64,000 nt of DNA from Ascidiella aspersa (lineage: Eukaryota). Below are positions 41,617 to 62,258 of this stretch, in pieces. Both the position numbers and the translations under genes were made by a program. The stretch lies in assembly GCA_963924565.1 (NCBI GenBank), contig OZ004607.1, positions 28,210,001 through 28,274,000 on the forward strand, in the 5' to 3' direction. Below the pieces are notes generated by a model that was not told where the DNA came from, did no database searches, and worked only from the letters and a program-made list of their open reading frames with translations. Positions within the stretch are counted from its first letter, which is position 1, and each line of letters begins with the position of its first letter.

Positions 41617-44600
41617 ATGAAGTACTTGAGTTTGCTGTTCAGCTTTGTTGCCGCGTTTTCGATTCCGATATCTTCGCAAAGAACAGCAACGCAAAGGCCT
41701 TCTGTACCAGGATCGGCAACCAAAAAGGTTTTGTCCGCGATCAAGCAGCAGGCCCCGCCCATTTTCGTACGACCCCATCAGCCGCCAGAACACCCAACGG
41801 AGAACCCCACAACGCCTCCGGCAAAAAAAAGCTTCCCTGAGTTCGACCCGGATCAATTGCCAACAGAGGACCCCATATTGGGTGTTTTATCTACAAGGTG
41901 GCACCCCAATCAACCAACCCCAACCGCGCCTTCTCCTAGTGAACCCCAATCAGGGATTCTCACAATCGGAGTCGAAACCCATCACCCATCGTCCCCACTC
42001 CCTAGCGTTGACCCAAATCCGGCAATACATCCGATAGCTTCCGAGGCGATTAGCACAAAGTTGAAATCGTCCACTGCGCTTACTACGCCCTTTAAAGTCA
42101 CGACAGCATCATCTACATATGTTTATACCCATTTAAACGCCAACTCTACCAACCTGGAACCGATTTTTAACGGCTTCCCAACGTTTTGCTCGTACGATGC
42201 CATAATCCTGTGCGCGGGTGTGCCGTTGATGCATTGCAAACGCTGCAGCATGCAAACCGCCGGCTTTTTCGCCTTCGCGATTGTCGTGCTCGCCTTTGCC
42301 ATCATTTTCGCCAACGCCCTGGTGATCTGGGTCTTCGTCAAAGGAAAGTCACTCTTCGTCAGCAGCTACGTGAAGATCAAGACATCGCTGGCCGTCGCCG
42401 ATCTATTCACAGGTGATTCTTACCGCCTGTGGCGAAACCATTTCATGCAAAATCTGGGGTCTCGGAACTTTATGGAATTAATCTAATAAGTCGTTTCAAA
42501 AAACCATATTATTATCATAAATCAATACGTCGCTTTTATAGATAAACATCACGACTGAAATGTTTTAGCAACTGCTGTTAAATCTGATACAAAACGTTTT
42601 TAAAACGTGTTCATTAAAAATGTATTTATTACTTTATAATATTACATATAGTAAAGGTACTTAAAATGTTATTAGAATGTTATTCTAAACGACCCAGCAA
42701 TAACAATTTTGTGTTTTTAAAGCCACTGTAAAATAAGGCTTTGGAAGTTTAAATATCAATCGTTTTATAACAAATTTATTTTTAGAAATACATAATTCAT
42801 CATTTCTGTAAGTAAATATTACATATGAAATATGTATATGGAAACGCTTTTAAATCGTGTATGGAAACGCTTTTTAAAAATGTGTATGGAAAACGCTTTT
42901 TAAAGTTTTACAAAACGATTTCATCATTAAACAACTACCCTATATAGATACGCTTCAACCTTGAATTTAGGCTCACCAATTTCAAATACTGGCAAGCCTT
43001 TATGACAGACAATGAAAAATTGATATGCCATACAAAAGTGGCAAAATTTGAGGATAGCTTTTTTGTGTTCTTTTTCAATACTTTATAGAGCTCAGAAACT
43101 TGAGGGGTTTTGTATGCCATCTTAACGAGAGACTATTTGGATAACTAGGCTGGATAACTGTAAGGATTGTCGATCGCGGTTAAGACACTTGTAAATATCG
43201 ACGATCGAGGGTCGGACATAAAATTTGTATTGATCTTATTTGACTGGGTTATTATAAATCGAAGTAAGCTAAAAAATAACTCAAAATATATAGTGAGTTT
43301 AAAATTGCATTAAAATTGAGGTTATTGCTTTGCATTCGACAAACATTCCTGTTTATAAACACATATTAATAACTTTGTTTTTCGAAACATGCTGCGGGCC
43401 TGATAATCAAACTGGCAGGCCAGATTTGGCGCGCGGGTCGTAGTTTGGTGATCCTTTGTATATAGCAGGGCTACTGAACTGTTTTTAGCAAAAGTCTAGT
43501 TACAAAAGTTTAGCATTTGCTTAGGTCCGTTATAACTCTCATGAAATAATTTATAGTCATACAAAATGTAATACGTATACATATGTCCTTCACTTCAACT
43601 GAGAATTCTGTGCTGTCCGTTACTAGAAAGTGGTTTTCAATAAACAGCAACAATTTTTTGCCAAGATAAAAACGATTAAATCGCAATGCTAAGTAAATAC
43701 TGAGACAGATAAGTTCCGTATTCTGACCGCGGCCCCCCAGTTAAGTAGCACTGGTATGTAGGCACTCTAAGCATATTTAAATCAATTCTGACAGGTGTTT
43801 TCTTACTGGTGGTGACCCTTCCGAACTTCGGCCTGACCGTGACCATGACGCCCGAAGAACTATTCCTCCACACGATGGCGCAACACGGGAGCGCCTGGGC
43901 CAGCGTCGGTGGAGTCCTGTACCTCCTCCTCTTTAGCTCTTCTCTTTACCATCTTGCCTTCCTGGCACAGCAGCGATTTTACGCTATCGTGTATCCGACA
44001 AAGTACAAACTGATTAAGGAGAGGTCGATATACATCGGGATCGCTGTGGTCTGGCTACTGTCGGTTTTCGCTGCCGTTTCTCCATGTAAGCAACATATAT
44101 GGTTCTTAAAAAATGAATAATGCTAATATAATTTGGAACGCAGATTTTCTAGGCAGAATTGTGTAGGCTTAAACATTTTTTCTACATTAGTGCTTAGTTT
44201 CAATCATTTGAATTTGAAGCCAAGTGCCAGATCGACAGATATGTTTATACGGATTCCCAGGGAGCAGCGAAAGAACTTTAGGTCATCAAAGTCAGCCGCT
44301 CTCTGATCGCAATATCATCAGAATACATGTGCAGGTCAAGAGTATAGAATAAATAATTCGAAAACAAATTAAAATACAATAAAACAACAGGATTTCTGTT
44401 GTTTCGGCCGTAATGTGGTAAAATCAGTTCAGTCGCGATGTTGTAATAATTTGTTTTCACTGACTCTATTAGAAGTGCTTATCTAGGTGGATCATTATTC
44501 GATGCGCGGCTTTTTGAGTTGATTGGCATCTAAGCTGTAAAAGATCCATTTTTTTAGAAATGCAAGGAGATTAATTAACTATTTCAATATCACTTCAAAA

Positions 44601-47335
44601 AGTGTTTTTAGGCATAATTTATCTTTTTAAAGTCAAAAAGTAATCATCGTTTGTTTGAATACAAGCCTAGAAAAGTCTAATCGCCGGATGTGTTTTGCTT
44701 ACAGTGTGGTTCCCTAACAGTTTAGTTTTTGCTTACACCCATCTGACCTATCTGTTCGACGTTACGACGGCTGAAATCAGCTACACTTCCAACTACACCC
44801 CGATGCTTATTTTTCTTCTCGTCATTTTTGCCATTCCGTTTCTCTGTTTGGTAGGTATTGAATCTTCACTATATAGTTATTAAAGAATAAGTTCTCGTCG
44901 ATTGTAAAGATGTAATAAAATAAATTTTTAATACGGTTTTCGGGGGTCTTAAGGTTTGTGATTTTTTAAGGAACATCGTTTGTCATTATGAAATGTGATC
45001 GTATAAAGTTTTTTGTTGTTTTCCTTTTGTTGTTAACCCAGCCATTCAACGATGAAAAAATAATGACGCCAGATTTTTATCTACTGTGAAGATGTCAAAT
45101 AACTGGGGTAGGGACTAGTAATGTAACGTGGTTATTGCAAGGAGATCATTTGAACCGAAAGCGTCTTATAATCGAAGCAAACTCGCAACGTGCAGAAAAG
45201 CAAATTAGGTCAGCATTTGGAAGCGACCGATTGGCACAGGAAGCAATTATACGGGGCGGCCAAAAATATATCCAGATTAAATTTAACAGCAAATCGTGCT
45301 TTGTGCTTTCCAGGCGTGCCTGTCTGCTATCACCGGTTACCTCACCGCGCGCTTCGTTGACAGATCATCGCAGATGACAGGCGCCAGTCGGAAAAGCGCC
45401 AAGGAGATGAGGGTATTCGCCACTCTGGCCGTTATGCAAGTCGGATTCACGCTAACATTACGTAAGGGTATATACGCGGCGCTGTTACGTGTACGGGCGT
45501 TGGTCCTTTTAAGTCGTCATGCAAAACGTGCTATTGCAATTAGGCGGGGGCTGTCCGATGTAGAAGCAGACGAATTAGCCATAGAACGTTTAGTATCAGT
45601 GCAAATCATGCCGATTTCCAAAATAACCGCTTCAAAATGCTTTACAAAATTGCATTCGGAATCCGACATCCACAAAACAGTATTAAATATAGTAAAGTTT
45701 CTTACATAATTAGGTAGATTGGGGGTTGACCGAATTTTGTTTATCATTTAATAATGACGTAACATAGTTACATCATCGCCAATAAATCGTGTGCTACCAT
45801 AAATGTCGCAAGCCACCTTGCTTTTTTAATGCAGTATTAAAGCTGGTGAACACTTTAGTGATCTACGTTAAAATTGTACCGGGTTAAAAGTACCAGTATA
45901 TAATAAAGGTATAATGTATTCTCACTGCTCAGTAATCGAACTTAACTAGCTTTTTTCAAAGTATTAATCACCAAGTGGCCTACCCCTGTTATAAAATAGA
46001 GAAAGCAAAAATAAATATCTCCCCCCCGTGTCAATGCCAACGAAGTGACGATGTGAACAATTGCCCTGAGGTCCGCATTTCAAACAAACATTTACACGAA
46101 AAACAAAAGTAAACGTGTTGTCGCCGTGTTTGGCTGATTGCTGCTCGGAACGAAACCGACAGCAGATTACCCATCTTTCTTCATTAAAACACGCAAGAAT
46201 TTATAGCAAAATTCACCCAACTGCGCTTCATGCGTTTCCACGTCGATAGGTATTTCAGCATGCGCTTTACAGCTATAACCTTTTGAACTGTCGACTTTCG
46301 CGCAGTTCCGTTGTTCGTTGCCACCGTGCTGTCCTACACACGTGACCTCGAAAACGAGTCGCTGGCTGTTCCGTACGTCACCTGCTTCTATCTGTCCCTA
46401 TCAAACAGGTTAGTCAACTCATAAGTATAGTGTTCCGCTGCCTAGTTCTGTGTCAAAGACTAGACATAACACAAGGTGGTTTACTTAATTGCTTTCGCTA
46501 TTGATACGTGATACATAATCATAATGGGTGTGGTCAATACAGTCACGTGATACACTGTTTACATAGAAATCAAGTAATACTGTATAGTTTGTAAACACTA
46601 CAATAAGGACGTTAAAGATGTGCCACCAGGCCCACTTTTGTTTATTTTTTTGCGCTCTGTCTGTCCGAAAACATATATTTTTGCCCGCTTTAACGAATTG
46701 CCGTGTAAGACTCATTAAAGTGCAATTTTTACCAAATGAATCTAAAATCGCCTTTGATCTGTCAATCTGTGAATTTATTCTATGTGTCATTAATCTTTAT
46801 CTTAACCAAAAAAAAACGCAATGAAAAATATATGGTCATAATATTTTTCTGTAGTTGACATTTCTTCGTCACTGCATTTACGTCTAATTATTATAACAAG
46901 GAGCAGTGGCGTCAAAATCATGCCCAAATAGAATCAAATGGTATATTTACTTCTCAACAAATTATAAGTGGTAAATTGAATTTGCAATTAAAAACATTAA
47001 AGCGGTTTTATACTGTTGAAGATGTCTACAATTTTCGTGTATATTCTTGCATACATGTTCTGACAACCTAAATTACCAAATGGCAGAAATATACCCTTAC
47101 ATTTTTGTTCGATTTTGAATATTTTAGTCTCGTCAATGTCATTGTGTACACCGTCGTGGATCTAAAGTTCAGGAACTCGGTCAAGAGAATTTTCTCCACT
47201 TCGGCTCGATTGCAGAGAAAAAGAAAAGCCAGAATTTACGGTTCCACGACAATTCGAACCCGCAAATCGATTGTTCGACTGAGTTACTTGCCTTCCAAAA
47301 CCCCAATGTACGTACACCGGGACTCAGTCGTTTGA
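41617..47335 (+). CDS. Non-canonical class A GPCR (family B, gene B1) with signal peptide, Pro/Thr/Ser-rich stalk and Cys-rich cap; 6 coding exons, ~563 aa
   Basis: Exons 41617-42412, 43795-44085, 44705-44850, 45314-45461, 46306-46408, 47128-47335; phases 1,1,0,1,2; spliced length 1692 nt, open. Seven hydrophobic segments with TM1 AN, TM2 SLAVADLFTG, TM3 SSLYHLAFLAQQRFYAIVYP, TM4 W, TM5 P, TM6 FTLTLLP, TM7 SNSLVNVIVY, helix 8 DLKFR. Confidence 0.92.
42836..42904. repeat. Three ~23-bp tandem units in B1 intron 1
   Basis: tatggaaacgctttt(t)aaa occurs three times. Confidence 0.7.
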
Positions 47336-47598
47336 AAAACCGGTGCCCAGTGTGTATTTTTCATTGCAAGAGTGCGACTGTGAGTTAAACAGGCAAAAAA
47401 CACTTGTTAGAGACTCCGTTGTGGTAACGGACTTGATAAAGCTTGTAAACAAAAATATTTTAAGGAATTCACGTTAAATATAACTGCATTGTATATGCAT
47501 TTAAAACTCGTATCCTGTTTGGCGGTAAACATTTTTGCTTTAAATATATGAGTTTCATCGATCCGCCGGATTTAAAGCAGCTGACAAACACCCTAAAA

Positions 47599-47915
47599 CA
47601 GGGGTGTCCAACTCAAACATAGCGACGTGACAATTTTTATCTTATAACTTCTTCTCGTGCCAAAGTTTATTAGCAACTACTTTTTTTCTAATATTAAAAG
47701 CGCTCTTATACAAAAAATAAAAACAGTATAATGTTATAATATCAGCAGTAATTGTTTGTGGTCGTAATTGCTGTTTTGTGAATAAACGTTAACAATTGAC
47801 TGTATAATAAATTTAGCTTTTTTGACATTTGGCTGTATTTTGGGGGGCTTGGGTGCCAATTTTTAATAGGTCGGTTACCACATTTGGCAAGCGCGCCTCA
47901 TGTTGGACACCCCTG
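47599..47915. mobile_element. hAT/Charlie-like MITE downstream of B1
   Basis: Perfect 14-bp TIR caggggtgtccaac / gttggacacccctg; flanks ccctaaaa and tgctaaaa (6/8 TSD). Confidence 0.8.
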
Positions 47916-49564: not shown

Positions 49565-52500
49565 TCAAGCGATTGTGTCTCCCTTTTTCGAGGTACTCTG
49601 GGACAACTTTCGGGACGATTGCTGGCTCACCCTAGTCTTGGTGCTGTGAGTTGAACCAGCTGACGACAAGCGCGCTTTGGTCTTTTTTCCGAGGCAAGGC
49701 AGCAGCTTTACAACGGCGTGTCGAAACTTTTCGTCTACCACGCTGTACACAAGCACGTTGACCAAACTGGAAAATCGAAAAATAATTGGCCCGAATTTGG
49801 CTATTACATTCTTTATGGAAACTCAAAGTAAATTCAACTGCTATACCTGTTTGACATTGCAAGATAGAAACTTGTTGTATAAGGGACAGCCAGCGAAGCG
49901 AACCCCAAAATTCCAACGTAAGACAAAATTGTCGTTACGAAAAGTGGAACTACAAATACGCACAAGAAAGATTAAACGTAGGAAACCTTTAATTGCATCA
50001 ATATATAATCATCGCACTATAATGCAACTACTCGCTCTAGGTTTTTTCTCGGTTTGTAAAGGTTTTATTGGCGTTTTTACTAGTCATTTGATGTTAACCT
50101 ATACTTGATTAATATAGAGGACATAGTTTTAAGCACCCAGCACGGTAGTATTCGCTGTTATACATTATGAATAGTCGAAAATTCTGACACTTCGCGATCA
50201 ATAGTTTTAAGAAAATGCAGCGTAACATTTGCAATCCAAACCAAAATTCTCTCGTGGCAAAAACAGTGTGCGTCCACTGTCAAAACAAAAGCCTTTAATA
50301 GTCCATAAATAGCTAAAATGTACTCGAATCATAATAATCAATTACTTACGCAATGTGACTGTGAATCCTATTTGCATTGCAGCCAGAGTTACAAACACCT
50401 TCGCTTCGGGTTTGCCCAACTGCTGCGTAGTGCGTATGTGCGAAGATTTCTTCAAATAGTCTCTGGTGAAAATGGCTGTCACCACAGCTATTGAGGTCTT
50501 TCGCAAGAAAATACAAAATAAACTGCCTTAGAAAAACGCACAATAATGTTGTATCAATGGAATAGTCCTAAATTACTTTTATTTATTTTAAAATTGCAAG
50601 CTTTCTGTCTAAAACTATTTAATTAAGATGTTCATCTCACCATGAGCAAAAATGGGACAAGAAAGACAATCACCAGAAATGGAATCATCGGTGCGATTCC
50701 ACTTCCAGCTTCATCAGCCGCCACATCGTACAAGAAAGTTATGTGAAAATATCCAAAGACGAAATGATGCGGAAACCACACTGAAAGAAATCAGGGAACA
50801 AATATTTGTGTCTGTTTCGCAGGAATATCACATGATTGTAAACGACCATAAGGAGGCCGTAATGCAACGCAAATAGAAGAAACACGCAAATAATTTCCTC
50901 CGTATTCCTTCCGTTAATTTTGTTGCATCATATGTTATGTGTTGCAAATGTGAATCAAAACGGTGGCGGGTCTGTTTGCTATATGTATGTGTATTGCTTA
51001 AAAAGTAGTAACCGTAATTTTTCGTGTGTGAACGTGTTCTATGACGTGTGTTGAATTCGTCGAAATATTTTTTATGATTTTCCGTTAAGATAGCGTCTAT
51101 GAAAACCTGGTCGTTATTTGAAATCCTAAAACCCCCTCCAGTAACGTCATCTTGTGTCAACTATCGCCTGCTGTAAATATACAAAGAAAAGCAACCTTTT
51201 TTCCTTTTTTTAATTTTTGGCATACGTTTCCAAAAATAAATTTAGAAGTGGAATTTTGACTGCCAAAAATTAAATAATGTATAGTCGGGTGGCTAATACG
51301 AAAATCTTGCTTTTAAACCAAATTGTTTTTTTGTTTACCTTCAATATGCAATGTCAGCGTCCATCCCTACATTTTTTACATGCAAGCGAAGCATATTTTA
51401 CACATGGCGAATTAAACCGTTAGCCTAATCCATTCTTTAAAACCGAGTGAAATGCTCGCGACATTTCTATTTAGAGAGTTTTTTTAATTGTGATGTCATT
51501 ATTTAGTTAGCGACTATAATGTTTTAATTTGTTTTCTTCGAACTGTCGTTGACTACTTGCCAATAAGCAAGCAAGCCGCGGTATTTCTCCACTTAACTGC
51601 CTGAAGCTGAGGGAAGCGCCAAGCCTATCAGTGCTTACATGGGGAAATCGCTGCGAGAAGCGCCAGTGACCAAACGACGGCGATCCCAATCTGAATGTTT
51701 CGCTCCTTGACGTGTTTGTAGGTAAGTGGCCAACGTATGGCGTGCAGGCGCTGCTGGGCCAAGAAGATCAGATGGTAGAGCGACGAGGTAAACAGCAAAA
51801 GGTAGAAGATGCCGCCCGCGGTCGCCTGCGGGGATCGCCTTTGCTGGATCACGTATTCAAACAACTGTTCTCCAGTCATCTGCAATGTCTTGCTGAAGTT
51901 GGGCAAGGTGACCAGTAGAAGGAAAAGGCCTGAGCACAGTAAAAATCAGATCGTAAACAGCCGGCCCTGCGGTTAAATGGAAGCGGTGCCTGAAGGTATA
52001 CGTCAACAAGTTACTGAAGCATAGGTGACTAGATAGGCATTACTAGCAATCGATTATTTCTTTATCGCCTGATCTATAAATCGTGGCTTGTAGGAGTTAT
52101 CATCCCCACAGTATTAGGCAATTAATCAGTATAAGACAACTTATACCCAGTTGAGAACTACTTCCTGCTAAGTACTCCGAGTAAATTAAAATATGTATAT
52201 TGGGAACTCTCACCAGTTAGCAGATCGGCAGCCGCCAAGGAGAGCTTGATCTTTGCGTAATTTCCAAACTCGTCGCTGCACTTGACAAATACCCAAATGA
52301 CCAGCGCATTGGCGAGAATGATGCACAGCGCGAGGATGGCAACGGCAAAGGCCAACAAACCGGCCCTGGTCATGCTGCAGAGGGAGCACTCGCGCAGGGA
52401 AATGTTACGACAGACAGATACCGCCCTGAAGGCGCAGAACGTCGGGAGGCCGTTCAGCGTTTTGTTCGTTGAGTTTGTTGTGCGGTTTGCTTGTGGGCTG

Positions 52501-53289
52501 AGAACGGCCGGCGGACCGAAGTAGTAGTCGCCATACATCGGTGGCGAGTCATAGATGCCGCCGTAATACGTGTCGTTCGGCAAGGGATTTAAATCTTGGA
52601 AAAATCGTTACACCTTGTAAAACAAATCGTTTTATTCCACCACCCCCCTCCCCCCAAAAAACTATGACAAAGCGTGGTAGATTGGTGATGCACGTAAACA
52701 CATATTTTTTTAACCACGAGAGTTTTTATCGGACCCTCTTCAACTTTTGGTTTCAATGAAAGAAATTTCCAGCTTAGATATAGACATCATTTTTAGCATA
52801 ATAAAAGAAAAGAACATATTTCACCATGTGCACTTCCCTTACATTTGCCTGCAACAAGTATATGCGAGCAACGGTTGCTAGTCTGAATAACAAGAGCATA
52901 TTTCCTTCATTGTTTGACTTTTAATACGTTTTGGGCTTTACGTGTTATAAATATACATCAGACTACTTCACAGAAATACCTTGGTTTTCATCAAATGGAA
53001 GAAAAGGGGCGGGATCGGTTAGGTTTTCGTCGTTTTGAATTGCATCAGAATTAGTGGAGTTTGCTGCAATTATATTGGTTAAAGAAAAGCGTGTTGTGGC
53101 TAAGTTTTTTTTAAATATTCGATAAATAGGTCGATAAATTAAGAGTCGTAGAGATATTGCACATGGCGTCATACCTGTAATTGAAGTTGCCAAAACGCTT
53201 GTGTCATTTGCCGGAGCAGTATCGGTCAAACAAAACGTCAAACAAAACAAGAGGAGTAGACCGGTCGGCTTAACAAATTGAAATTTCAT
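49565..53289 (-). CDS. Non-canonical class A GPCR (family B, gene B2), signal peptide plus Tyr-rich N-terminus; 8 coding exons, ~487 aa
   Basis: Minus-strand exons 53289-53175, 53063-52980, 52594-52214, 51929-51639, 50780-50641, 50497-50350, 49949-49847, 49766-49565; spliced length 1464 nt, open. The 291/148/103-nt exons match B1. Motifs SLAAADLLTG, QQRLHAIRWP, FTVTLLP, SNSLVNVLVY. The two N-terminal introns are less certain than the rest. Confidence 0.9.
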
Positions 53290-54275: not shown

Positions 54276-56788
54276 ATGTCTAGCCTCCAGGATTTTTCAA
54301 TTCCACCACCGCCGCCGCCACCGCCAAATACAACTGTGGAGTCGACGACGGTATTCGACCCGATTATGTTCGACCTGTACGATTGGGTGGTTGATAGAGT
54401 CGTCGTAGAACCAAATGTAACCAACGTGAGCGTCCTTTGCGGTTTACCGGCCTTCTGCGAGGCTAAGGCGGTCGACACGTGCCAAAATGTTACTTTATCT
54501 GGATGCCAAGTTTGCAGTATGGCCGGAGCGGGAATATTCGCCACAGTTGTCCTGTTGCTGGCTCTTTGCATTCTGTTCGGAAACGGATTTCTCCTTTATT
54601 GCTCGCTTCTGAAAAGAGACGGATTCACGGGACATTACAACGCCGTCAAGTGTTCGCTGGCCGTCGCCGATATGCTTACAGGTAAAATAAACATATATAC
54701 ATATTAAGGAGTTGTTTACTGAAAGCCACATTGATGTAATTTTATATTTTAGCTTAGTCAGCACCTTTTTCAAATAACAATTTTAAGCCCATACTTGTTT
54801 TAATCCGTTGCTGGGTTTATGCCGCATAAACAAAATTGAGCAAACAAATGGGACACTTAATTTATTGCCCCCGTTTGCGTTCCTTTTCAAACTTATTACT
54901 TCTTCTCGTGAATGCGAGTAAACAAAACATTAACAAGAAAGGTTACTTTCCTGTTCACCGAGTTACTTCTATGACAAGTAGGATTTAGTTTAATTCGACT
55001 TTCATTTTACTGTATTCACCTTGAATCAAACGAAAATATTAGTATTTCCGAAGTAATTTTATATAAACGACAATTGTTTTCATCAACGTTAGAGAATAAA
55101 ACGCGAAATACAGAAATGCCATATTATTTACAGGATTTCAAATTCTGTTTGTAACCTTACCGCATTTCGCATGGACAATAAACATGACGCCTCCCCAACT
55201 TGACGCATTCCAACTATCCTTGCGAGGTTCACAAAAGGCCAACGCTGGTGGTGTATTCTACATGCTCGGCTACGTCGCTTCCATCAACCATCTTATGTTC
55301 ATGGGGTTCCAGCGCCTTTACGCCATCCTGCGACCTCTTCATTTCAAACTACAGAAGAGATTAAACTTGTATATCGGCCTGGCGCTCGTCTGGGTTGTTT
55401 CCATTCTGTCCGCGGTTGCACCACGTAAGGTTCAAGAGTTTTTGTATGGTAATGGAAGGGTTTATTACCGATGCCGGTCTTATATATATTAAAGCTTTCA
55501 GCTATTGGGTACTTACTTAACAGGAGGGTGGAGAGGGCAAGCGGTAAAAACATAGAAATATTGGCCGCAAAATTAGCAGTTTTTGGATGTTATGTTTTGC
55601 AGTTTGGTTTTACGACTTTGTGTATACCTATACGCACATCATATTTCTGTACAACTTGACTGTAAGAAACGTGATTGAACCAATCAACTTTACTTCGCTT
55701 GGTGTGCTTTTGGTGGTCATTCTTGGAATACCCTACATTATAATGGTCGGTAGCTGCTGATTTAATTCGTTTATTTATTAACACATTTTTATCAAAAGCT
55801 CGTGCCTGAACGAAAAAATGCTCACTGAAATTTTGTTCTCGGTAAAGACAGCCACAACAATCGGTACTGGTCTCGTGATTCACTTTAAGATCATGCGGAG
55901 ATGGAGGTCGCTTTCCAACACAGACAACGAAACCATTTCAAAGCAAAGGAAAGAACGAAGAATGTTTGTCACTCTTGCCCTTATGCAAATCGGTTTCACG
56001 GTAACTCTCAGTAAGTTTACATTCGTCGGAGTTAATTAAATTGGGTTAGCTGCCACTAGAACAGATAGTTAGTAAATCTAATGGGGTACAATAATACACA
56101 TAATTAATCTGGCCTGGGCAAAATTTCAAGTGGAAGGGAGTTGTGATGTGACAATGCTTTGTAGTCAAAATCTACTTTAAAGGGTGCATTTCTGTGATAC
56201 TTGACATTTATAGCGATAGTGTCATAAACATTTAAGTTTGTTATTTTAAATGTATTTCCTTTATTACGCTGTTGCACCCTTTATTAAACAATTTTGTTCT
56301 ACCCGTTTGTACATAATGTAAAAAGGAATTAGTCTCGGAAAAATCTCCACAATTTAGAAACAAATTAGTAACTTAACTCCATCTGTGTTTCGTTTAGTAC
56401 CTTTGGCTGTGGTGGGCATCCTGAACTTTGTGCGCGTGCTCCAGTGCAATACCACCCCGACGCCATATTTGGTCTGCTTTTATCTCGCCACATCAAACAG
56501 GTGCGACAATATATATAGTTATTTAAACATTTGATCAAATTGACAATCGTTAAACTAACGCTTCTCTTTAGTCTGGTGAACGTACTGATATACAGCGTCA
56601 GAGATGAGAAATTTCGTCAAGCGATGCGTGACGACGTCAAGATCATATGTCGAGAAAAAAGCCAAAGACTTCCCCTGGCGACAAAAGATTTATCCAGAAC
56701 CAGTGCCAAGGATAGCGCCAAAAGCAACACCTTGAGTACAGTTGCTCATTCCACAGATGCTGTAGTCGCTTCCAATACATCGCTGTGA
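54276..56788 (+). CDS. Non-canonical class A GPCR (family B, gene B3), no signal peptide, poly-Pro N-terminus; 6 coding exons, ~440 aa
   Basis: Exons 54276-54681, 55134-55424, 55603-55745, 55848-56010, 56398-56500, 56572-56788; phases 1,1,0,1,2; spliced length 1323 nt, open; in-frame TAA just upstream of the ATG. Motifs SLAVADMLTG, FQRLYAILRP, FTVTLIP, SNSLVNVLIY. Confidence 0.92.
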
Positions 56789-57276
56789 AGCCTTGCTTGT
56801 TATTATAAACAATATATGTCTCATGGTTAAGGATGTGAACCCCGTGTGAACTGATAATTAGTTTCAAATGGACACATCGCTATCTGCGTTCGAGTTTAAA
56901 GCAGTGGTGTGGGAAAGCCGGAGAGGTTCGAAACCGCGTTCCAGTAAAATAATTGCTACCGGATATGCGTTCCGGTAATATAAGTTTTGCAAGTTCGCTG
57001 TACCGATAACACAATTGTTATGTTTTTTACAAGCCATCACGCTATCTTTTCACCTCATCAAACGATACAGTTCCGAAGGTTACTTTGTTAGACGTTATCT
57101 GCTACGACATAACTTTACGACGTCATCTCGAAATATTCGCATACGTTTCGATAAAAACATTTTTCACTTTCGCCCCTGCTTTAAAGTGACTTTGTACTTT
57201 ATAAACTTTCTTTTATTCTTGAAATTATTGAAAAAACATAAAAAAAACCGTTACCACATAACTACCTCTTATACGC

Positions 57277-57579
57277 CAGTGTTTCTTAACCTTTTCTACT
57301 TGGGGGCGCACCTATAGACGTATGGAAAACGTGGCAGCCCACCTTACGAGCGAAGCGAGCGCGAAATGTTTGAGGTGTACCGATATTTCTCTTAAAATGC
57401 CTGCATTTTTTATTATATGGGTTTTATAGTTACATATCTTTATAGGGACTTCCAGCCTTTGAGACTGAAAACGTTATTTTGTCTATTAAAGCCCATTAAT
57501 TTTAGACTTATTTCGACATGGTTTTTCCTTTCGCGGCGCACCTAGCAGCATTCCATGGCGCACCGGTTAAGAAACGCTG
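57277..57579. mobile_element. hAT-type MITE, CAGTGTTTCTTAACC TIR family
   Basis: TIR cagtgtttcttaacc / ggttaagaaacgctg (14/15); TSD ttatacgc / ttatatgc (7/8); body similar to 62266-62807. Confidence 0.85.
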
Positions 57580-58224
57580 TTATATGCATTGCGTTCCGCT
57601 AAACAACAAAAGCCTTACAAATGTGATGAGGAATGATCAGCTGTTTGGTGTTGAGTCTGCATTTTGTCAAAGAGTGGCTATTTTGTGTCTACAAATAGAG
57701 GAGGGCGGCTGTGCGCATTTTTTTGGCTATTACTATAAAAGAGCAAATCATGAAAATCGCAGTTTAACAAGTTAGTAAAAAGGTAATTAGGTTTCCAATA
57801 TGATGTTGACCTAGTGCGTTACTTAAATGTAAAATATTCATGTTTTTTGCAAAAGCGTAAACGCCAGTGTATTTGGCAAATTCACTTCCAAAAATAGTAA
57901 GTCATTGAATGCCTTTCTTTAATAATATAATAATTTTGCGGATTTATCATTAATTTTTTTGAACACAATTTTCTTAGTTTTTGTGTAAAATGATAAAAGC
58001 AACGTCTGTCGCCTATCTTTATTTCTATTTTACAGTAAGGCAATGGTTTCACGAATTCTATACAGAAAGATTAACATTAAAAACAGTGAAAAGTGTCAAG
58101 CTAATTGCTAGTGTGTATTTTTAGGGTTTAAGAACAAAAACCGCGAGCTGTTAAAAGGTAATCGTCTTGTTAAATCTGCTACTATTGGGTCCATCACTCT
58201 AATTTGCCGCGTTTAACCGTTAAT

Positions 58225-58448
58225 TTGACGCCTTCCAACTATCCTTGCGAGGTTCACAAAAGGCCAACGCTGGTGGTGTATTCTACATGCTCAGCTACGT
58301 CGCTTCCATCAACCATCTCATGTTCATGGGGTTCCAGCGCCTTTACGCCATCCTGCGACCTCTTCAGTTTAAACTACAGAAGAGATTAAACTTGTATATC
58401 GGCCTGGCGCTCGTCTGGGTTGTTTCCATTCGATCCGCGGTTGCACCA
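58225..58448 (+). pseudogene. Orphan copy of most of B3 exon 2 (TM3-TM4), no splice sites
   Basis: Aligns without gaps to 55200-55423; 7 mismatches in 224 nt by eye. The 5' part of the exon, the acceptor and the gtaagg donor are missing, and the flanks are unrelated to the B3 introns. Confidence 0.88.
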
Positions 58449-58557
58449 ATTTTTAACTAATATTATTTTCCATAAAAAGTCAGCCGCCGTGTGGATATTA
58501 TTTGTAATTTCGTTAGGTGTAAAGTACCTTTTTGGCAGTTCGAGTGACTATTTAGAA

Positions 58558-58933
58558 CAGGGGCCGGCAACCTTTTTCTAGTCGCGGGCCAAAACCAAAC
58601 TCATAAAGGTCTCTGCGGGCCGCACAACATATGTTAACTGAGATTTTGTGTTAACAAAATTTTGGAACAACTGTGAATCTGGCGGGCCTCGGATTTTTTG
58701 CACTTTAAAAACGTGTTTAATTACATTCAAGGAGGCAGTAAAATGTTGCCGCAAAACGCGAAAAATTAGCGTTTGCTTGGTTTGAAATTCGAGTCCACAC
58801 GTCGTCATCCATACTACTAATGAAAAGTGTAATCAAACTACTTTTAGGACACGCGATGACCTTAATAGTTCTATAGTTCAGTGTTTAGTAGTTTTTTAAG
58901 TCCGGGCAAACGGCGAGTGGTTGCCGACCCCTG
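58558..58933. mobile_element. hAT/Charlie-like MITE
   Basis: TIR caggggccggcaacc / ggttgccgacccctg. A related left end (ggggtcggcaactttttt...ctagtcgcggg...ccaaactcat) lies at ~5236-5282 in A1 intron 2. No TSD match. Confidence 0.7.
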
Positions 58934-60390
58934 ACAAGGACGGTTTAAACCGGAAAGAACACACAACATGGCATTAAATAAATTAGGTTGTCAAAATGTG
59001 ATTCGATAAGTTTTAGAGTTTAGAAAACGGGAGGTATTTCGTTCATATTTAAAGCACACATAGTACAAAGGTGTTAGTAAAGAAAAGAAAATGTTTAAAT
59101 GTAACAAAAAAGTTTGTATATGTGTTATAGTTAATTGTTTAGCTTCTGTTAACGATTTAAAACACACAAAAAAATCTTATAAACAGAAAACTGTTTTAGG
59201 TAAACACTATAGCGTTTCTAAAACAGGTTAAAGCTTCATTTAGAAAAATCAAAAACAATTATGGCTGACAGGACTTGATAATTTTTATTTTGAGTTGATG
59301 TTTGTAGGTGTGGCTAAAACTGCATAAATCTAAATTACCAGCAATCGTGAAAGTAGTCTAACCGTAATGAGAAATTAACCTTGTAACAACTGGATCTTAC
59401 GCTTAAAAAAATTACGCCAAAAAGCAATATTTAAAATTATAGTGTTGCTAAAACTGAAAATATATTGAAATGTATTAAAATCGGTTCGCTTTAAAGTTTA
59501 GGTGTCACTACTTTTGTGCAGTGAATATTTTAACCGGTTTATGTAACCTTAAGAACAAAGCGAGCAAGGTACGACATGTCCAAACAAAATACAAATTATG
59601 TTCAATAAAAATGGAGAAAAAAGAGGGACATATTGAAGGTGTTAACAAAGAGTCAGATCCCATATTGAGGTTTGGGCCATTTTCAGGGATGAAGTCAGAA
59701 AGTTACCTGATAGCGTAACGTCATAAACAATGAATCTTAAAACTCTGTTGTGTTACTGCGATCGCCGACTTGTTTTTGTAGCTCCTCAACCTGAATAGCA
59801 AGAGTTATGTTCACCGTGTTCGTGTTTACGATAATAATTCTGCGTCTCGCTTTTGTTTGCAGTTTTTTTGCAAGTAACTCTTTCAAAGAACGCGTTTGCC
59901 CAACCCTACAATATACCAACGTGCCTTAGGTATCCGTGGCTGCGTTTTTAAGCTCATGTTTCTTTGCTGTATTTTGTTGTGCAAATAAATAAGGCTGTGC
60001 CCTCAGGCATAACCTCTAGTCTATAAGACACATTACATTTACATGGTATGGCTTTGACCATGGTTTACCGAATAAAGTATTCAAATTCGTAAATATTTTA
60101 CTGCAAATTGTAAAACCTAAAAAGGCGCCGGGTAAAGTTTTGCTGAGTTCTTGTGATAGGCTCTTGTGTCAGTTTTCAGTTTTTACAGTAAGAGGTTTAG
60201 TGCCGTTTAGCACTTATACCTATTGTGCTGCTTTGTGGCCTTTGTTGCATCTTCAGTTTGAATTGCCACCTTCATTGCGCCTTTAAAATTTATCTCATCG
60301 GCGTTGGTTCGAAAAGGTACTTTCAGTACTATAAAGAGTGTGTGCCGGGCTTAATCCAAACTTAACTTAAGATCACACAAGGCTACTTCG

Positions 60391-60452
60391 AGGTAACGCG
60401 TGCTGCCAAGTCGCCCGGTTTAGGTAACGCGTGCTGCTAAGTCGCCAGGTTT
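60391..60452. repeat. 31-bp tandem duplication
   Basis: aggtaacgcgtgctgc(c/t)aagtcgcc(c/a)ggttt occurs twice. Confidence 0.8.
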
Positions 60453-61846
60453 TAGTATCAAAATATCTCGATAATAATAATTTAAGAGGCAGTTTACGAC
60501 AGAAGTGGCATTTCAAACGTTAAACCCATGTTTTCAAAAGTCTATGTTTGATTTGTCATGAATACTCTTTGGCATATGTTTTTTGTCTGTCGCCTCAATC
60601 GCTTTGTTTGAAGTTTCTAGACTTATCCAGTTGTCGTACCACAGGCCGTTAGGACAAACTGTTAGAAATGTTTTTATTTAATTGAGGGTTAAGGGATAGA
60701 AATGTTTTGTTATTTAACAAAGGGCTTTGTGGCGGCTTTTTGCTTTTTTTATGTAATGCATGTTTTTTGTTGGGGTAAGAAAATTTTAAGTACATTTCAG
60801 TTGGGTTGTCGCAATTAACTCTGGCACACTGGCTGCTTAGTTAAAATGGTTTAAAAAAAAACGACACGACTTTTTTGTACAGCAACGGTTATTGTTATGC
60901 CGCTCAAGCAGTTAACGTAAGCTCGCTGCCTAATGCCGTGGGCAGATGTACTCGTGCTAGCACTATGCATCAACGGTCTCGTAATAACATAAGTTAATCT
61001 CACTACCTACAATACACTTACTTATCAGAAAACAAATATATAGCAAGCCGTTCTATAGTTGAGCCGGTGGGCAATACAATTACCATAATTAAATATAAAA
61101 ACAAAATGGTTTAGTCGCGTCAAATGAATTGGTTTGTTCGGGAAAACGCCTTTTGAAGTTGGTTACTTATTCTTTGTGATATTCGGAAGACTGGTGTGAA
61201 AACTGCACATCGTTCAGCAGGATCTGCTGATGTCTTTGATTGATTCGTTTCCGTAAGCTTTAGCGCACGACACGTACAACACGTTTCTATATTGGCAAGA
61301 AAAAAACTTTTATTGCCCCTGAAGATTTGCCAAATGCATTTAACTAACCACTAGAGTCCACATCCAATGATAACGTAATGTCTAACTTTTTTAATTTGAC
61401 TTGACAGTCTTGGAAAGGCCGACCTTAATACTTCAGTTAACGCAAAAATAAAATAAAGTAATTTTCGCAGCTAAATCGCGGTTGTTATGCAAGGATGATG
61501 GATGTTTTTGACGGGGTGTTTCGGACACACATAGCATTGACTTCCTTTAGTAACGTATAGGGCAAAGGTGTCATCGGACATTTAGGCTTGTATATGTTAT
61601 GCCCGAGCGAACAGGTATTAATGAGGAGTATGTAAGTGTACCTATACTTTTTACAGGTTAGGTAAATTTAGAGCTTGTTTAAAAAAGATCAGAAAAGTTC
61701 ATACAGAACCACTATTTTGAAACATATTGTGTTATAAGTGTTATAAGTGCATATGGGTGGTTTATCGGAAATATGCTAAAGGTAACAATTTATAAAAGAA
61801 AATTCTGTTTTTACCAAAACTTGCAAAGGAATAGAAAAACAACAAA

Positions 61847-62258
61847 ATGACGAGCCCGGAGCAAAATATCTCAGCTATTCCGTTTAAATTGGTTATTGTA
61901 CCCGAATTTATAACAATGGGAACACCGCTCGTTCCCCTTCTAGGCAACTGGATACCTGACCGTCAATTTGTCGCACCTACGTTTGACAACACAAGCAATG
62001 TGACAAGCATCCTTTGCGGTTTACCAGCCATTTGCGATGCTAAGGCGGTCGACACGTGCCAAAATGTTACTTTATCTGAATGCCAAGTTTGCAGTATGGC
62101 CGGAGCGGGAATATTCGCCACAGTCGTTCTGTTGCTAGCTCTTTGTATCCTGCTCGGCAATGGATTTCTCCTTTATTGCTCGCTTCTGAAAAGAGACGGA
62201 TTCACGGGACATTACAACGTCGTCAAGTGTTCGCTGGCCGTGGCCGATATGCTTACAG
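61847..62258 (+). CDS. First coding exon (N-terminus, Cys cap, TM1, TM2 start) of a fourth family B GPCR (B4), partial
   Basis: ATG 61847 to phase-1 donor ACAG|gttagc at 62258, the same position as in B1-B3. The 3' ~250 nt are ~94% identical to B3 exon 1. No exon 2 found before the window end, so the gene either continues beyond it or is truncated. Confidence 0.82.

What the first reader, a model, noticed from the sequence alone, without database searches (positions are those of the whole stretch)
41617..62258. Expanded GPCR family in which a 4-Cys N-terminal cap accompanies loss of the TM3-ECL2 disulfide and rewritten activation switches
Seen: B1-B4 share GxPx(F/I)C-x7-C-x7-C-x2-CSMxxAG directly before TM1 (B1 CSYDAIILCAGVPLMHCKRC, B2 CAFRAVSVCRNISLRECSLC, B3 CEAKAVDTCQNVTLSGCQVC), while everything upstream differs. 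In B1-B3, position 3.25 is Ala and ECL2 has no Cys. DRY is QRF/QRL, CWxP is TLLP/TLIP (no W6.48) and NPxxY is NVxxY. D2.50, S3.39, N7.45, S7.46 and N7.49 (sodium pocket) and R3.50/Y7.53 are kept. Known: C3.25 is absent in melanocortin, S1P/LPA, cannabinoid and GPR3/6/12 receptors, several of which use an N-terminal lid, but these generally keep E/DRY, W6.48 and the N/DPxxY proline. Inference: a lineage-specific orphan receptor family with a disulfide-knotted lid and an unusual, possibly constitutively active mechanism; tandem expansion fits chemosensory or immune sensing. I do not recognise it as a named family.
Basis: partly seen in the sequence, partly recalled or inferred. Interest (0 to 1): 0.85.

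Follow-up and report, generated by a model that had tools for sequence, protein, structure and literature searches.

The report
Sea-squirt GPCR family with cysteine cap
The window holds four intact, spliced genes of a large receptor family found so far only in sea squirts; a small disulfide-bonded cap sits just before the first membrane helix and several classic class A GPCR switch residues are replaced, but its ligands and signalling are unknown.

Summary
B1, B2 and B3 lie wholly in the window. B4 has exon 1 here and five more exons just past the end. All four are intact six-exon class A GPCR genes with GT-AG introns at the same positions and phases.

All four carry C-x7-C-x7-C-x2-C two residues before TM1. 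All have Ala3.25, no ECL2 cysteine, QRF/QRL, TLLP/TLIP and NVxxY. The sodium-pocket residues, R3.50 and Y7.53 are kept.

The cap is a family feature:
- At least 47 exon-1 copies exist in this 309 Mb genome.
- About 140 of the 150 listed database cluster representatives keep all four cysteines.
- Every named hit I sampled is an ascidian (Ciona, Phallusia, Clavelina).

C2 and C3 are lost together, which implies C1-C4 and C2-C3 bonds. A fifth cysteine co-varies with an ECL3 cysteine.

W6.48, P7.50 and Y5.58 are missing family-wide. Q3.49 marks only one subfamily. E6.30 is mostly kept, which argues against obligate constitutive activity. The cap and 7TM core are under purifying selection (dN/dS about 0.15), while the N-termini drift.

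Two Ciona members were listed in 2008 as unclassified "Other Rhodopsins". I found no description of the cap. Ligand and coupling are unknown, and RNA evidence could not be obtained here.

The parts
41617..47335 (+). B1 gene, 563 aa, six exons: 41617-42412, 43795-44085, 44705-44850, 45314-45461, 46306-46408, 47128-47335
   Evidence: Frames and junctions read codon by codon. The model assembles without an internal stop and all introns are GT-AG. Exon 2 matches Pfam 7tm_1 at 35 bits, above the 30.5-bit cut-off. The N-terminus has a signal-peptide-like start followed by a 190-aa region that is 40% Ser/Thr/Pro.
42172..42252 (+). B1 cap: G-F-P-T-F-C, x7, C, x7, C, x2, C-S-M, directly before TM1
   Evidence: This copy has no N-x-S/T sequon after C2, and it lacks both C0 and the ECL3 cysteine.
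49565..52583 (-). B2 gene, six exons on the minus strand: 52583(or ATG 52538)-52214, 51929-51639, 50780-50641, 50497-50350, 49949-49847, 49766-49565
   Evidence: The reading frame is intact and all introns are GT-AG. The first in-frame ATG is at 52538.
52371..52451 (-). B2 cap, with an N-I-S sequon two residues after C2
54276..56788 (+). B3 gene, 440 aa, six exons: 54276-54681, 55134-55424, 55603-55745, 55848-56010, 56398-56500, 56572-56788
   Evidence: The exon 3/4 junction was taken as phase 0 by analogy with B1, B2 and B4. A phase-1 alternative changes one residue only.
54441..54521 (+). B3 cap, with the extra upstream cysteine C0 (L-C-G) and an N-V-T sequon. The partner cysteine lies in ECL3, in exon 5.
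61847..62258 (+). B4 exon 1 (cap at 62018-62098). Exons 2-6 lie beyond the window at L031 3320-3610, 3676-3818, 4444-4606, 5196-5298 and 5835-6012.
   Evidence: The gene is an intact 429-aa model, 72% identical to B3.
58227..58454 (+). Lone relic of exon 2, 93% identical to B3 residues 159-234, with no other exons nearby
   Evidence: Local tblastn of the B3 model against 56801-61800. It was also listed in the genome search, with one TAA stop recorded inside the match.

Best explanation
B1-B4 are functional members of an ascidian-restricted subfamily of class A (rhodopsin-like) GPCRs that has been tandemly expanded in this genome.

Each protein has three parts:
1. A freely evolving N-terminus. 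Most paralogues begin with a signal peptide followed by a Ser/Thr/Pro-rich glycosylated stretch of 30-260 aa. Some Clavelina relatives carry arrays of Sushi domains instead.
2. A constant cap of about 25 residues ending two residues before TM1.
3. A conserved 7TM core.

The cap is most likely a small hairpin held by two nested disulfides, C1-C4 and C2-C3. It often carries an N-glycan on the C2-C3 loop. In most members a third disulfide ties it to ECL3, from a cysteine five residues upstream of C1.

I infer that this cap and ECL3 tether took over the structural role of the TM3-ECL2 disulfide, which the whole family lacks, and that it shapes the entrance to the ligand pocket.

I infer that the receptors are ligand-gated and G-protein-coupled in the ordinary way. 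The sodium pocket, R3.50, E6.30, L3.43, P5.50, F6.44, N7.49, Y7.53 and F8.50 are kept. However, W6.48, P7.50 and Y5.58 are replaced family-wide, and the acidic 3.49 is replaced in the subfamily that includes B1-B4. The details of the activation relay must therefore differ from textbook class A receptors.

Shown here: the gene structures, the conservation, the covariation, the selection pattern and the taxonomic range. Inferred: the disulfide bonds themselves, the lid role, G-protein coupling and the ligand class. My best guess for the ligand is peptides or environmental or self cues, as expected for an expanded sensory or recognition repertoire.
For: Genes and family size:
- Intact six-exon models with conserved intron phases.
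- At least 47 exon-1 copies, none with a stop, and at least 52 exon-2 copies in the genome, mostly in tandem clusters on contig C1.
- 11 of 12 further paralogue regions show the cap followed downstream by an NVxxY-type TM7.

Membership and range:
- Pfam 7tm_1 is met by B1 exon 2 and by full-length orthologues at 61-70 bits.
- A profile of cap+TM1+TM2 finds 169 proteins among 1.84 billion, and every named one sampled is ascidian.

Conservation in 33 full-length sequences:
- C1 and C4 33/33; C2 and C3 31/33.
- A3.25 30/32; no ECL2 Cys in 29/33.
- W6.48 0/33, P7.50 0/33, Y5.58 0/33.
- D2.50 31, S3.39 29, R3.50 30, E6.30 21, P6.50 32, N7.45 31, S7.46 32, N7.49 32, Y7.53 33, F8.50 32.

Disulfide pattern:
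- C2 and C3 are lost together in two unrelated sequences, P0030 and P0145.
- C0 and the ECL3 Cys are both present in 23, both absent in 9, and mismatched in 1.
- 140 of about 150 representatives keep all four cysteines, and 75 of 151 aligned stretches carry the sequon.

Structure:
- AlphaFold2 models of two orthologues give the cap pLDDT 92-97, with isolated bridge residues at exactly C1 and C4, a one-turn helix between C1 and C2, and TM1 starting two residues after C4.

Selection:
- dN/dS for the 7TM core is 0.167 (B3/B4) and 0.127 (B1/B2).
- In two other tandem clusters, cap-to-TM2 is 0.15-0.21 against 0.73 for the N-terminus.

Expansion and expression elsewhere:
- The tree shows species-specific clades of tandem neighbours.
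- The Ciona member ci0100154142 has cDNA and EST matches listed in the 2008 catalogue.
Against:
- No structure coordinates were available, so cysteine-cysteine distances and the position of the cap over the pocket were not measured.
- C2/C3 co-loss rests on two sequences. Two other representatives lack a single cap cysteine (P0113 and P0131).
- Ligand, coupling and expression sites are unknown.
- The full-length analyses used database orthologues 30-40% identical to each other, not the window's own joined proteins.
- Placement within class A is unresolved. HMMER ranks aminergic and adenosine receptors first. Language-model features of the full-length protein point to LGR-type receptors, but not once the N-terminus and cap are removed.
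Confidence: 0.7

Rival explanations
1. The family is, or includes, the urochordate-only peptide-receptor clades that have already been deorphanised in Ciona (the Ci-LF and Ci-YFV receptors). In that case B1-B4 would be receptors for tunicate-specific neuropeptides. The family would be partly characterised, and ordinary agonist-driven signalling would already be demonstrated for it.
For: Shiraishi et al. 2019 (PMC6475428) describe the following:
- Ci-LF-R and Ci-YFV-R clades with no non-urochordate relatives.
- Only 21-26% identity to cannabinoid, adenosine and adrenergic receptors.
- Multiplication by paralogy within Ciona.
- Expression in the siphons.

My family behaves the same way in searches: aminergic, adenosine and CB1 receptors are its best solved relatives, and it has a Ciona-specific clade of close paralogues. 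One Ci-LF receptor gene (KH.C4.122) and one catalogued cap-bearing gene (ci0100154142, chr_04q) are both on Ciona chromosome 4. That is weak support.
Against: - The receptor sequences (Dataset S3 of that paper) are not held as text, so no comparison was possible.
- None of the Ciona members found carries such a name.
- Four of the five LF receptors are on chromosome 2, whereas the catalogued cap-bearing genes are on 3q and 4q.
- Ciona has several other unclassified rhodopsin groups (23 'Other Rhodopsins').
Confidence: 0.2
2. The receptors are ligand-independent or self-activated. Either they are constitutively active because the acidic 3.49, W6.48, P7.50 and Y5.58 are gone, or the cap acts as a tethered agonist or inverse agonist that relays events in the variable ectodomain, as the hinge does in glycoprotein-hormone receptors or the Stachel in adhesion GPCRs.
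For: - Neutralising D/E3.49 raises basal activity in several class A receptors (my own knowledge).
- The cap is the only constant extracellular element, lying between very different ectodomains (mucin-like stretches here; Sushi arrays of 600-1100 aa in Clavelina) and a constant core.
- Full-length language-model features resemble LGR-type receptors only when the N-terminus and cap are included.
Against: - E/D3.49 is kept in a third of the family, although those members share the same cap and core.
- R3.50 with E6.30 (the ionic-lock pair), the sodium pocket and L3.43 are conserved. These are features that stabilise an inactive state.
- No functional data exist.
- The N-terminal regions evolve almost neutrally (dN/dS about 0.73), which fits a spacer better than a precise sensor.
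Confidence: 0.12
3. The family is a degenerate offshoot of LGR/relaxin-type (delta-group) receptors that lost the leucine-rich-repeat ectodomain. On this reading the cap is the remnant of the cysteine cluster that closes the LRR/hinge just before TM1.
For: - Automatic names 'relaxin receptor 2' for the Phallusia and Ciona members.
- The nearest ESM Atlas clusters for full-length P0001 are all LGR-type (GRL101-like, TSHR, FSHR, RXFP1), scoring 0.88-0.92.
- Some members carry large ectodomains.
Against: - No LGR, TSHR or RXFP chain appears among the best 60 of 578 solved-structure matches to the family profile. Aminergic, adenosine, NPFF and CB1 receptors lead.
- The LGR signal disappears when residues 74-385 alone are queried.
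- The cap has no match in any solved chain. Alignments start at TM1.
- No LRR or GnHR_trans Pfam match.
- In the 2008 catalogue the genuine Ciona LGR-like/LDLa cluster hits LGR8 at about 1e-30 and keeps NPxxY, whereas the cap-bearing genes hit GPR50 and HTR1A at about 1e-6 and were filed elsewhere.
- LGRs keep the TM3-ECL2 disulfide (my own knowledge).
Confidence: 0.1
4. The array is decaying: these are pseudogenes or non-functional duplicates whose odd motifs reflect relaxed constraint.
For: - One lone exon-2 relic lies between B3 and B4.
- No transcript evidence could be obtained.
- B2 lacks a signal peptide, and its open frame extends upstream of the first ATG.
Against: - All four models are open, with canonical splice sites.
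- dN/dS is 0.13-0.21 for the cap and 7TM core.
- The 'odd' residues are themselves conserved across ascidian genera.
- All 47 exon-1 copies lack stops.
Confidence: 0.03

Closest known systems
Ciona 'Other Rhodopsins' ci0100154142 and ci0100142144 (Kamesh, Aradhyam and Manoj 2008, PMC2396169)
   Same: They belong to the same family. ci0100154142 shows L-C-G-F-P-S-F-C, the further cap cysteines, QRL, M-Q-I-G-F-T-V-T-L-V-P and N-S-L-V-N-V-L-V-Y. ci0100142144 shows ERL and N-S-L-V-N-V. The authors suggested that such genes are ascidian-specific.
   Different: They were only catalogued, as unclassifiable, with best human hits GPR50 (1e-6) and HTR1A (4e-6). Neither the cap, the lost disulfide, the altered switches nor the family's size was described. 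Ciona has roughly ten members, against at least 47 here.
MECA-cluster receptors (MC4R, S1P1, LPA1, CB1)
   Same: They have no C3.25-ECL2 disulfide. The N-terminus folds over or beside the pocket. MC4R has an N-terminus-to-ECL3 disulfide (my own knowledge). CB1 appears among the sequence hits at 5e-7 to 1e-5.
   Different: They keep DRY, W6.48, NPxxY and Y5.58 and have no four-cysteine hairpin before TM1. No orthology is shown: aminergic receptors score better.
Melatonin receptors MT1/MT2/GPR50
   Same: They also have an amide in place of the acid at 3.49 (NRY) and a non-proline at 7.50 (NAxxY) (my own knowledge). GPR50 was the best human BLAST hit of a Ciona member in 2008. A 'melatonin-related receptor' cluster is among the structural look-alikes.
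   Different: They keep C3.25-ECL2 and W6.48 (my own knowledge) and have no cap. They are not among the top 60 profile hits.
LGR / glycoprotein-hormone / relaxin-type receptors
   Same: They have a cysteine-rich hinge directly before TM1 that couples a large ectodomain to the 7TM core. Glycoprotein-hormone receptors also lack W6.48 (my own knowledge). The full-length protein's language-model features resemble them.
   Different: This family has no LRRs, and neither the cap nor the 7TM core is detectably similar to LGRs by HMMER. LGRs keep the TM3-ECL2 disulfide and NPxxY. The Ciona LDLa/LGR-like cluster is a separate family.
Urochordate Ci-LF / Ci-YFV peptide receptor clades (Shiraishi et al. 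2019, PMC6475428)
   Same: They are tunicate-only class A clades, only distantly similar to amine, adenosine and cannabinoid receptors, and multiplied within lineages.
   Different: If they are, the family would have known peptide agonists.
Tunicate-specific 7TM family of KH.C3.516 (Johnson et al. 2020, PMC7397655)
   Same: It is another expanded, tandemly arrayed, tunicate-only 7TM family proposed to be chemosensory.
   Different: The published KH.C3.516 sequence has none of the defining motifs: no cap, no S-L-A-x-A-D, no QRL/ERL, no NVxxY (by eye). It is a different family.

Membership tests
Class A (rhodopsin-like) GPCR, Pfam 7tm_1 | Significant match to PF00001 above the gathering score | tested here: met
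   B1 exon 2 alone scores 35.0 bits against the 30.5-bit cut-off. B3 exon 2 scores 24.5 bits, E 2e-5. Full-length orthologues score 61-70 bits over profile positions 1-260.
Class A (rhodopsin-like) GPCR, Pfam 7tm_1 | Reference residues N1.50, D2.50, R3.50, W4.50, P5.50, P6.50 and P7.50 | tested here: inconclusive
   Six of the seven are present in B1-B4 and in 30-33 of 33 family members. P7.50 is absent in all 33 (V 28, F 3, I 1, W 1).
Class A (rhodopsin-like) GPCR, Pfam 7tm_1 | Seven-helix bundle plus helix 8 | tested here: met
   AlphaFold2 models of the orthologues P0001 and P0018 reach pLDDT 82.5 and 79.6 and pTM 0.78 and 0.75. Foldseek matches class A structures with target-normalised TM-scores of 0.75-0.81.
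Class A canonical extracellular staple | C3.25-ECL2 disulfide | tested here: not met
   A3.25 in 30/32 sequences and no ECL2 Cys in 29/33, including B1-B4.
MECA cluster (melanocortin/EDG/cannabinoid/adenosine) | Closest sequence similarity to MECA members, with DRY, CWxP and NPxxY retained | tested here: not met
   Aminergic receptors outrank CB1. W6.48 and P7.50 are absent, and 3.49 is Q in B1-B4.
LGR / relaxin-type receptors | Leucine-rich-repeat ectodomain and an LGR-like 7TM | tested here: not met
   No LRR or GnHR_trans Pfam hit. No LGR-type chain in the top 60 profile hits. The LGR-like language-model signal is lost without the N-terminus.
Ciona LDLRR-GPCR / 'Unclassified LGR-like' cluster (Kamesh 2008) | LDL-A repeats or a relaxin-receptor-like TM region (LGR8 hits about 1e-30), with NPxxY kept | tested here: not met
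   The supplement sequences of that cluster show N-P-I-I-Y-type TM7 and no cap. The cap-bearing genes are filed under 'Other Rhodopsins'.
Urochordate LF-R / YFV-R peptide receptor clades | Sequence membership in the clades of KH.C4.122, KH.C2.1132, KH.C1.745 and the other receptors | not testable with these tools
   Dataset S3 of PMC6475428 is not held. No other paper lists these identifiers.
Cap-bearing ascidian family (defined here) | C-x7(or 10)-C-x7-C-x2-C ending two residues before TM1, plus A3.25, no W6.48 and N-V/F/I-x-x-Y | tested here: met
   B1-B4 meet all of these. So do 28 of 30 paralogous loci and 140 of about 150 database representatives.

The most novel reading that the evidence does not exclude
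The cap, together with its tether to ECL3, is a self-contained extracellular coupling module. It replaced the TM3-ECL2 disulfide and links interchangeable ectodomains (mucin-like stalks, Sushi arrays) to a 7TM core that works without W6.48, P7.50 and Y5.58. That would be a class A architecture in which the receptor is driven through its own tethered N-terminus, as in LGRs or adhesion GPCRs. Ascidians would use it as a rapidly expanding recognition repertoire for settlement cues, self/non-self or microbes.
Probability: 0.15. Interest if true: 0.8.

Novelty: new variant of a known kind. Interest (0 to 1): 0.5.

Why it matters
Tunicates are the closest living relatives of vertebrates. Their large sets of unclassified rhodopsin-like receptors have been left out of GPCR phylogenies since 2008.

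This family gives a natural experiment. A conserved, selected class A core keeps the sodium pocket, R3.50/E6.30 and Y7.53. It has dispensed with four features usually treated as near-universal: the TM3-ECL2 disulfide, W6.48, P7.50 and Y5.58. In their place on the outside it has a defined disulfide module.

The family offers a testable case of how the extracellular staple and the activation relay can be rebuilt. It also offers a candidate sensory or recognition repertoire for ascidian biology, such as larval settlement, siphon chemoreception or haemocyte recognition. If the deorphanised Ci-LF or Ci-YFV receptors turn out to be members, agonists are already at hand for structure-function work.

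Tried and rejected
- The search for homologous proteins with P0001, with the family alignment A3 and with the Ciona alignment A5. The word filter returned only a few ascidian members plus unrelated dopamine and TAAR receptors. This gave Ciona member names but was useless for finding outgroups.
- The KH.C3.516 tunicate 7TM family: checked against the published sequence and rejected as unrelated.
- The Ciona LDLa/LGR-like cluster: rejected as a different family.
- Ci-LF/YFV receptor sequences: no supplement is held. No other paper or supplement lists the gene identifiers.
- The cap profile against solved structures at E up to 10: no chain aligns to the cap.
- Pfam on long N-termini of exon-1 fragments: no domains except Sushi in Clavelina.
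- Foldseek against the PDB: generic class A matches only.
- A Pfam 7tm_1 scan of this genome to find LGR-type 7TM exons for a direct profile comparison: it gave only six strong single-exon hits and was not pursued.
- The melatonin-receptor review did not contain the motif statements I wanted to cite. Those statements remain my own knowledge.
- Earlier-findings searches for the same family elsewhere in the genome found nothing.
- Pseudogene reading: rejected on open frames and dN/dS.


Full report
**Scope and method**

The window is G000:C1:28210001-28274000 of a 308.6 Mb assembly in 75 contigs. Those tools received single exons by reference, or database orthologues returned by earlier calls.

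Joined models were built only inside local scripts, from window.fa and L031. I used them to check reading frames, align the four paralogues and count substitutions. There is therefore no read evidence, and I did not try to get it another way.

**Gene models**

Stop-to-stop frames and codon-by-codon reading of each junction give the same structure for all four genes.

- There are six exons, all introns are GT-AG, and the phases are 1,1,0,1,2.
- Exon 1 ends inside the Gly codon of the TM2 motif S-L-A-x-A-D-x-x-T-G.
- Exon 2 is 291 nt in every gene and exon 5 is 103 nt.
- The TM6 motif spans the exon 4/5 junction and the TM7 motif spans the exon 5/6 junction.
- The assembled models have no internal stop: B1 563 aa, B2 417 aa, B3 440 aa, B4 429 aa.

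Two corrections to the finding's coordinates follow.

- Its end, 62258, is only the end of B4 exon 1. The other five B4 exons lie just past the window (L031 3320-6012).
- The B2 start listed at 52583 is a TTG under the bacterial code. The first in-frame ATG is at 52538.

A lone fragment of exon 2, 93% identical to B3, lies at 58227-58454 with no other exons around it. It is a relic.

Counting from R3.50 gives A3.25 in all four genes, and ECL2 has no cysteine.

The other motifs are as follows:

| Position | B1-B4 |
|---|---|
| 3.49-3.51 | QRF (B1), QRL (B2-B4) |
| 6.47-6.50 | TLLP (B1, B2), TLIP (B3, B4) |
| 7.49-7.53 | NVxxY |
| Kept in all four | D2.50, S3.39, N7.45, S7.46, N7.49, R3.50, Y7.53 |

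Everything upstream of the cap is unalignable.

**Size of the family in this genome**

The genome holds at least 47 exon-1 matches, none with a stop, and at least 52 exon-2 matches. Most sit in tandem clusters on contig C1:

| Location on C1 | Exon-1 copies |
|---|---|
| 27.86-27.96 Mb | 12 |
| 28.25-28.27 Mb (this window) | 4 |
| 28.43-28.50 Mb | 6 |
| 33.37-33.52 Mb | 12 |

A few more copies lie elsewhere on C1 and on C2, C4, C6 and C8.

- Of 30 loci fetched, 28 show the four-cysteine pattern directly before TM1.
- Of 12 further 10-kb regions, all 12 show the cap, and 11 show an NVxxY-type TM7 downstream.
- Where the TM3 and TM6 anchors were caught, they read QRL or ERF and G-F-x-x-x-(L/M/I/T). 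None has Trp.
- Most paralogues begin with a signal-peptide-like stretch followed by 30-260 aa rich in Ser/Thr/Pro with N-x-S/T sequons.

**Range outside this genome**

A profile of cap+TM1+TM2 (A2) was searched against 1.84 billion cluster representatives. It returned 169 proteins at E ≤ 1e-3 and 107 at E ≤ 1e-10.

I looked up 30 of them. All 21 that carry a name come from ascidians: Ciona intestinalis, Phallusia mammillata and Clavelina lepadiformis. Ciona savignyi came up in a separate search. The other nine, from Logan, JGI, ENA and MetaClust records, give no organism.

The automatic names contradict one another: relaxin receptor 2, TAAR9-like, tachykinin-like peptides receptor 86C, octopamine receptor beta-1R-like, apelin receptor-like and LPA receptor 3-like. 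That is what one expects when there is no true orthologue among named receptors.

Earlier follow-up notes of this scan independently call the genome a sea squirt.

**Family-wide conservation**

I aligned 33 full-length sequences: B1-B4 plus 29 database members.

| Feature | Count |
|---|---|
| C1, C4 | 33/33 |
| C2, C3 | 31/33 |
| A3.25 | 30/32 |
| No ECL2 Cys | 29/33 |
| 6.48 | never Trp (L 20, I 5, others 8) |
| P6.50 | 32 |
| 7.50 | never Pro (V 28, F 3, I 1, W 1) |
| 5.58 | never Tyr (T 15, C 5, S 4, I 4, ...) |

Residues that are kept: N1.50 33, D2.50 31, S3.39 29, L3.43 31, R3.50 30, W4.50 33, P5.50 31, E6.30 21 (plus D 2), F6.44 31, N7.45 31, S7.46 32, N7.49 32, Y7.53 33 and F8.50 32.

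Position 3.49 is Q in 18, E in 9 and D in 2. This genome also has ERF paralogues in the 28.43-28.50 Mb cluster.

The retained R3.50/E6.30 pair, sodium pocket and L3.43 are features that hold class A receptors inactive. They speak against obligate constitutive activity.

**Disulfide pattern of the cap**

Of about 150 representatives aligned to the cap profile, 140 keep all four cysteines. An N-x-S/T sequon sits two residues after C2 in 75 of the 151 aligned stretches.

- The only sequences that lack two cap cysteines lack C2 and C3 together. These are P0030 from Clavelina and the divergent P0145. This implies C2-C3 and C1-C4 bonds, a nested hairpin rather than a knot.
- A fifth cysteine lies five residues before C1 (L-C-G-F-P-x-F-C). 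It co-occurs with a cysteine in ECL3 in 23 sequences, is co-absent in 9, and is mismatched in 1.
- That pattern tests and supports the separate first-stage note on this window (s1-802166). B3 and B4 have this pair; B1 and B2 lack both cysteines.

AlphaFold2 models of two orthologues, each with a 26-sequence alignment, agree with each other.

- The N-terminus is disordered up to a few residues before the cap.
- The cap itself has pLDDT 92-97.
- DSSP marks isolated bridge residues at exactly C1 and C4.
- A one-turn helix lies between C1 and C2, and TM1 starts two residues after C4.
- ECL1 contains a helix and ECL2 is a hairpin.

I had no coordinates, so distances and the position of the cap over the pocket remain unmeasured.

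**Selection**

- For B3 against B4, the 7TM core has dN/dS 0.167 at dS 0.79.
- For B1 against B2, the core has 0.127, with saturated dS.
- In the 27.9 Mb cluster (11 genes), the cap-to-TM2 segment has a median dN/dS of 0.15 and the N-terminal region 0.73.
- In the 33.4 Mb cluster (7 genes), the figures are 0.21 and 0.74.
- Few pairs exceed 1.

The cap and core are constrained. The N-terminus is close to neutral, with no clear sign of positive selection.

**Tree**

A maximum-likelihood tree was built on the 87 usable columns of cap-to-TM2. Resolution is low and many forks are open. It splits the family into two groups (support 97/94).

- Group I holds most Clavelina sequences, including the Sushi-fused ones, three Ciona genes and Phallusia P0075. 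Most of its members have E or D at 3.49.
- Group II has Q at 3.49 in every member that is in the full-length table. It contains all 28 sequences from this genome that were included, a Ciona-specific clade, C. savignyi, two Phallusia genes and one Clavelina gene.

Within group II, the tandem neighbours of this genome form their own well-supported clades. The expansion is therefore lineage-specific. The ERF paralogues of this genome were not in the tree.

**Relation to known receptors**

- Pfam files the orthologues under 7tm_1 at 61-70 bits.
- Against all solved chains, P0001 alone reaches only 2e-9, to the histamine H4 receptor.
- The family profile reaches 2.6e-24, to the beta-2 adrenoceptor. 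It is followed by dopamine, adenosine A2A, serotonin, TAAR9, NPFF1, CB1 and rhodopsin. No LGR, TSHR or RXFP chain is in the best 60 of 578.
- The cap matches nothing: alignments begin at TM1.
- Foldseek gives generic class A matches.
- ESM Atlas features of full-length P0001 are nearest to LGR-type clusters (0.88-0.92).
- When residues 74-385 alone are queried, those clusters vanish, and assorted orphan and peptide receptors from many phyla take their place.

The LGR resemblance therefore comes from the N-terminus and cap, not from the core. I regard placement within class A as unresolved, with a lean towards the amine/adenosine/MECA/melatonin side.

From my own knowledge:
- MECA receptors also lack the TM3-ECL2 disulfide.
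- MC4R has an N-terminus-to-ECL3 disulfide.
- Melatonin receptors have NRY and NAxxY.
- Glycoprotein-hormone receptors lack W6.48.

Each deviation thus has a precedent. I could not find the combination together with the cap in any family.

**Literature**

Kamesh et al. 2008 (PMC2396169).
- Their supplement includes two members, ci0100154142 (chr_04q) and ci0100142144 (chr_03q). I identified them by searching the supplement for short motifs.
- Both are filed under "Other Rhodopsins", with best human hits GPR50 at 1e-6 and HTR1A at 4e-6.
- cDNA AK113479 is listed for both, and several ESTs for ci0100154142.
- The authors excluded such genes from their trees and suggested they are ascidian-specific.
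- Their LDLa/LGR-like cluster is a different family.

Johnson et al. 2020 (PMC7397655).
- They describe a large tunicate-only 7TM family around KH.C3.516. Its published sequence lacks all the motifs here, so it is unrelated.

Shiraishi et al. 2019 (PMC6475428).
- They deorphanised urochordate-only class A clades (Ci-LF and Ci-YFV receptors). The description would fit this family.
- I rate identity at about 0.2. It is the first thing to check.

I found no paper describing the cap.

**Verdict**

- The family is real, selected, unnamed and ascidian-restricted, and it is strongly expanded here.
- The cap is best read as a two-disulfide hairpin, often tethered to ECL3. It accompanies the family-wide absence of the TM3-ECL2 disulfide.
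- Constitutive activity and the lid role are untested. The retained inactive-state residues argue against obligate constitutive activity.
- It is a new variant of a known kind, of moderate interest.

Noticed in passing
window 2182-7595, 16415-22127 and 35036-about 36000 (+): Three genes of a different class A family lie upstream of the B array. Their exon 1 carries G-N-L-M-V-I and N-L-A-V-A-D-L, and a later exon carries a canonical C-W-T-P-Y. The third has the His/Asp tract noted in the first-stage note s1-802018. They keep W6.48 and are not part of the cap family.
   Followed up: no
database proteins P0058, P0089, P0093, P0095, P0132, P0134, P0143 (Clavelina lepadiformis): Members of the same cap-bearing family are fused to N-terminal arrays of Sushi/CCP domains and reach 600-1340 aa. 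Both RefSeq and an independent annotation predict these fusions. Sushi arrays on a class A 7TM core are unusual. These members keep E3.49 and have x10 instead of x7 between C1 and C2.
   Followed up: partly
window 58227-58454 (+): An isolated copy of exon 2, 93% identical to B3, lies between B3 and B4. The genome search recorded one TAA stop inside the match. It is a remnant of a partial duplication.
   Followed up: yes
G000:C1:28428615-28502376 (for example L039 and L043): A neighbouring tandem cluster of the same family keeps E3.49 (S-C-E-R-F and S-I-E-R-F) and has M-V-V-G-F-T-I-A-L in TM6. So both the acid-keeping and the Q3.49 types coexist within 250 kb.
   Followed up: partly
window 13982-14342: Two runs of N (167 and 168 bases) are flanked by short repeated coding-like words.
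   Followed up: no
ECL1 of all family members (for example B3 exon 2, 55134-55424): A conserved N-x-S/T sequon and W-T-(M/I/L)-N-x-T motif in ECL1 is followed by a predicted extracellular helix. ECL1 is unusually long and structured for a class A receptor and may pack against the cap.
   Followed up: no
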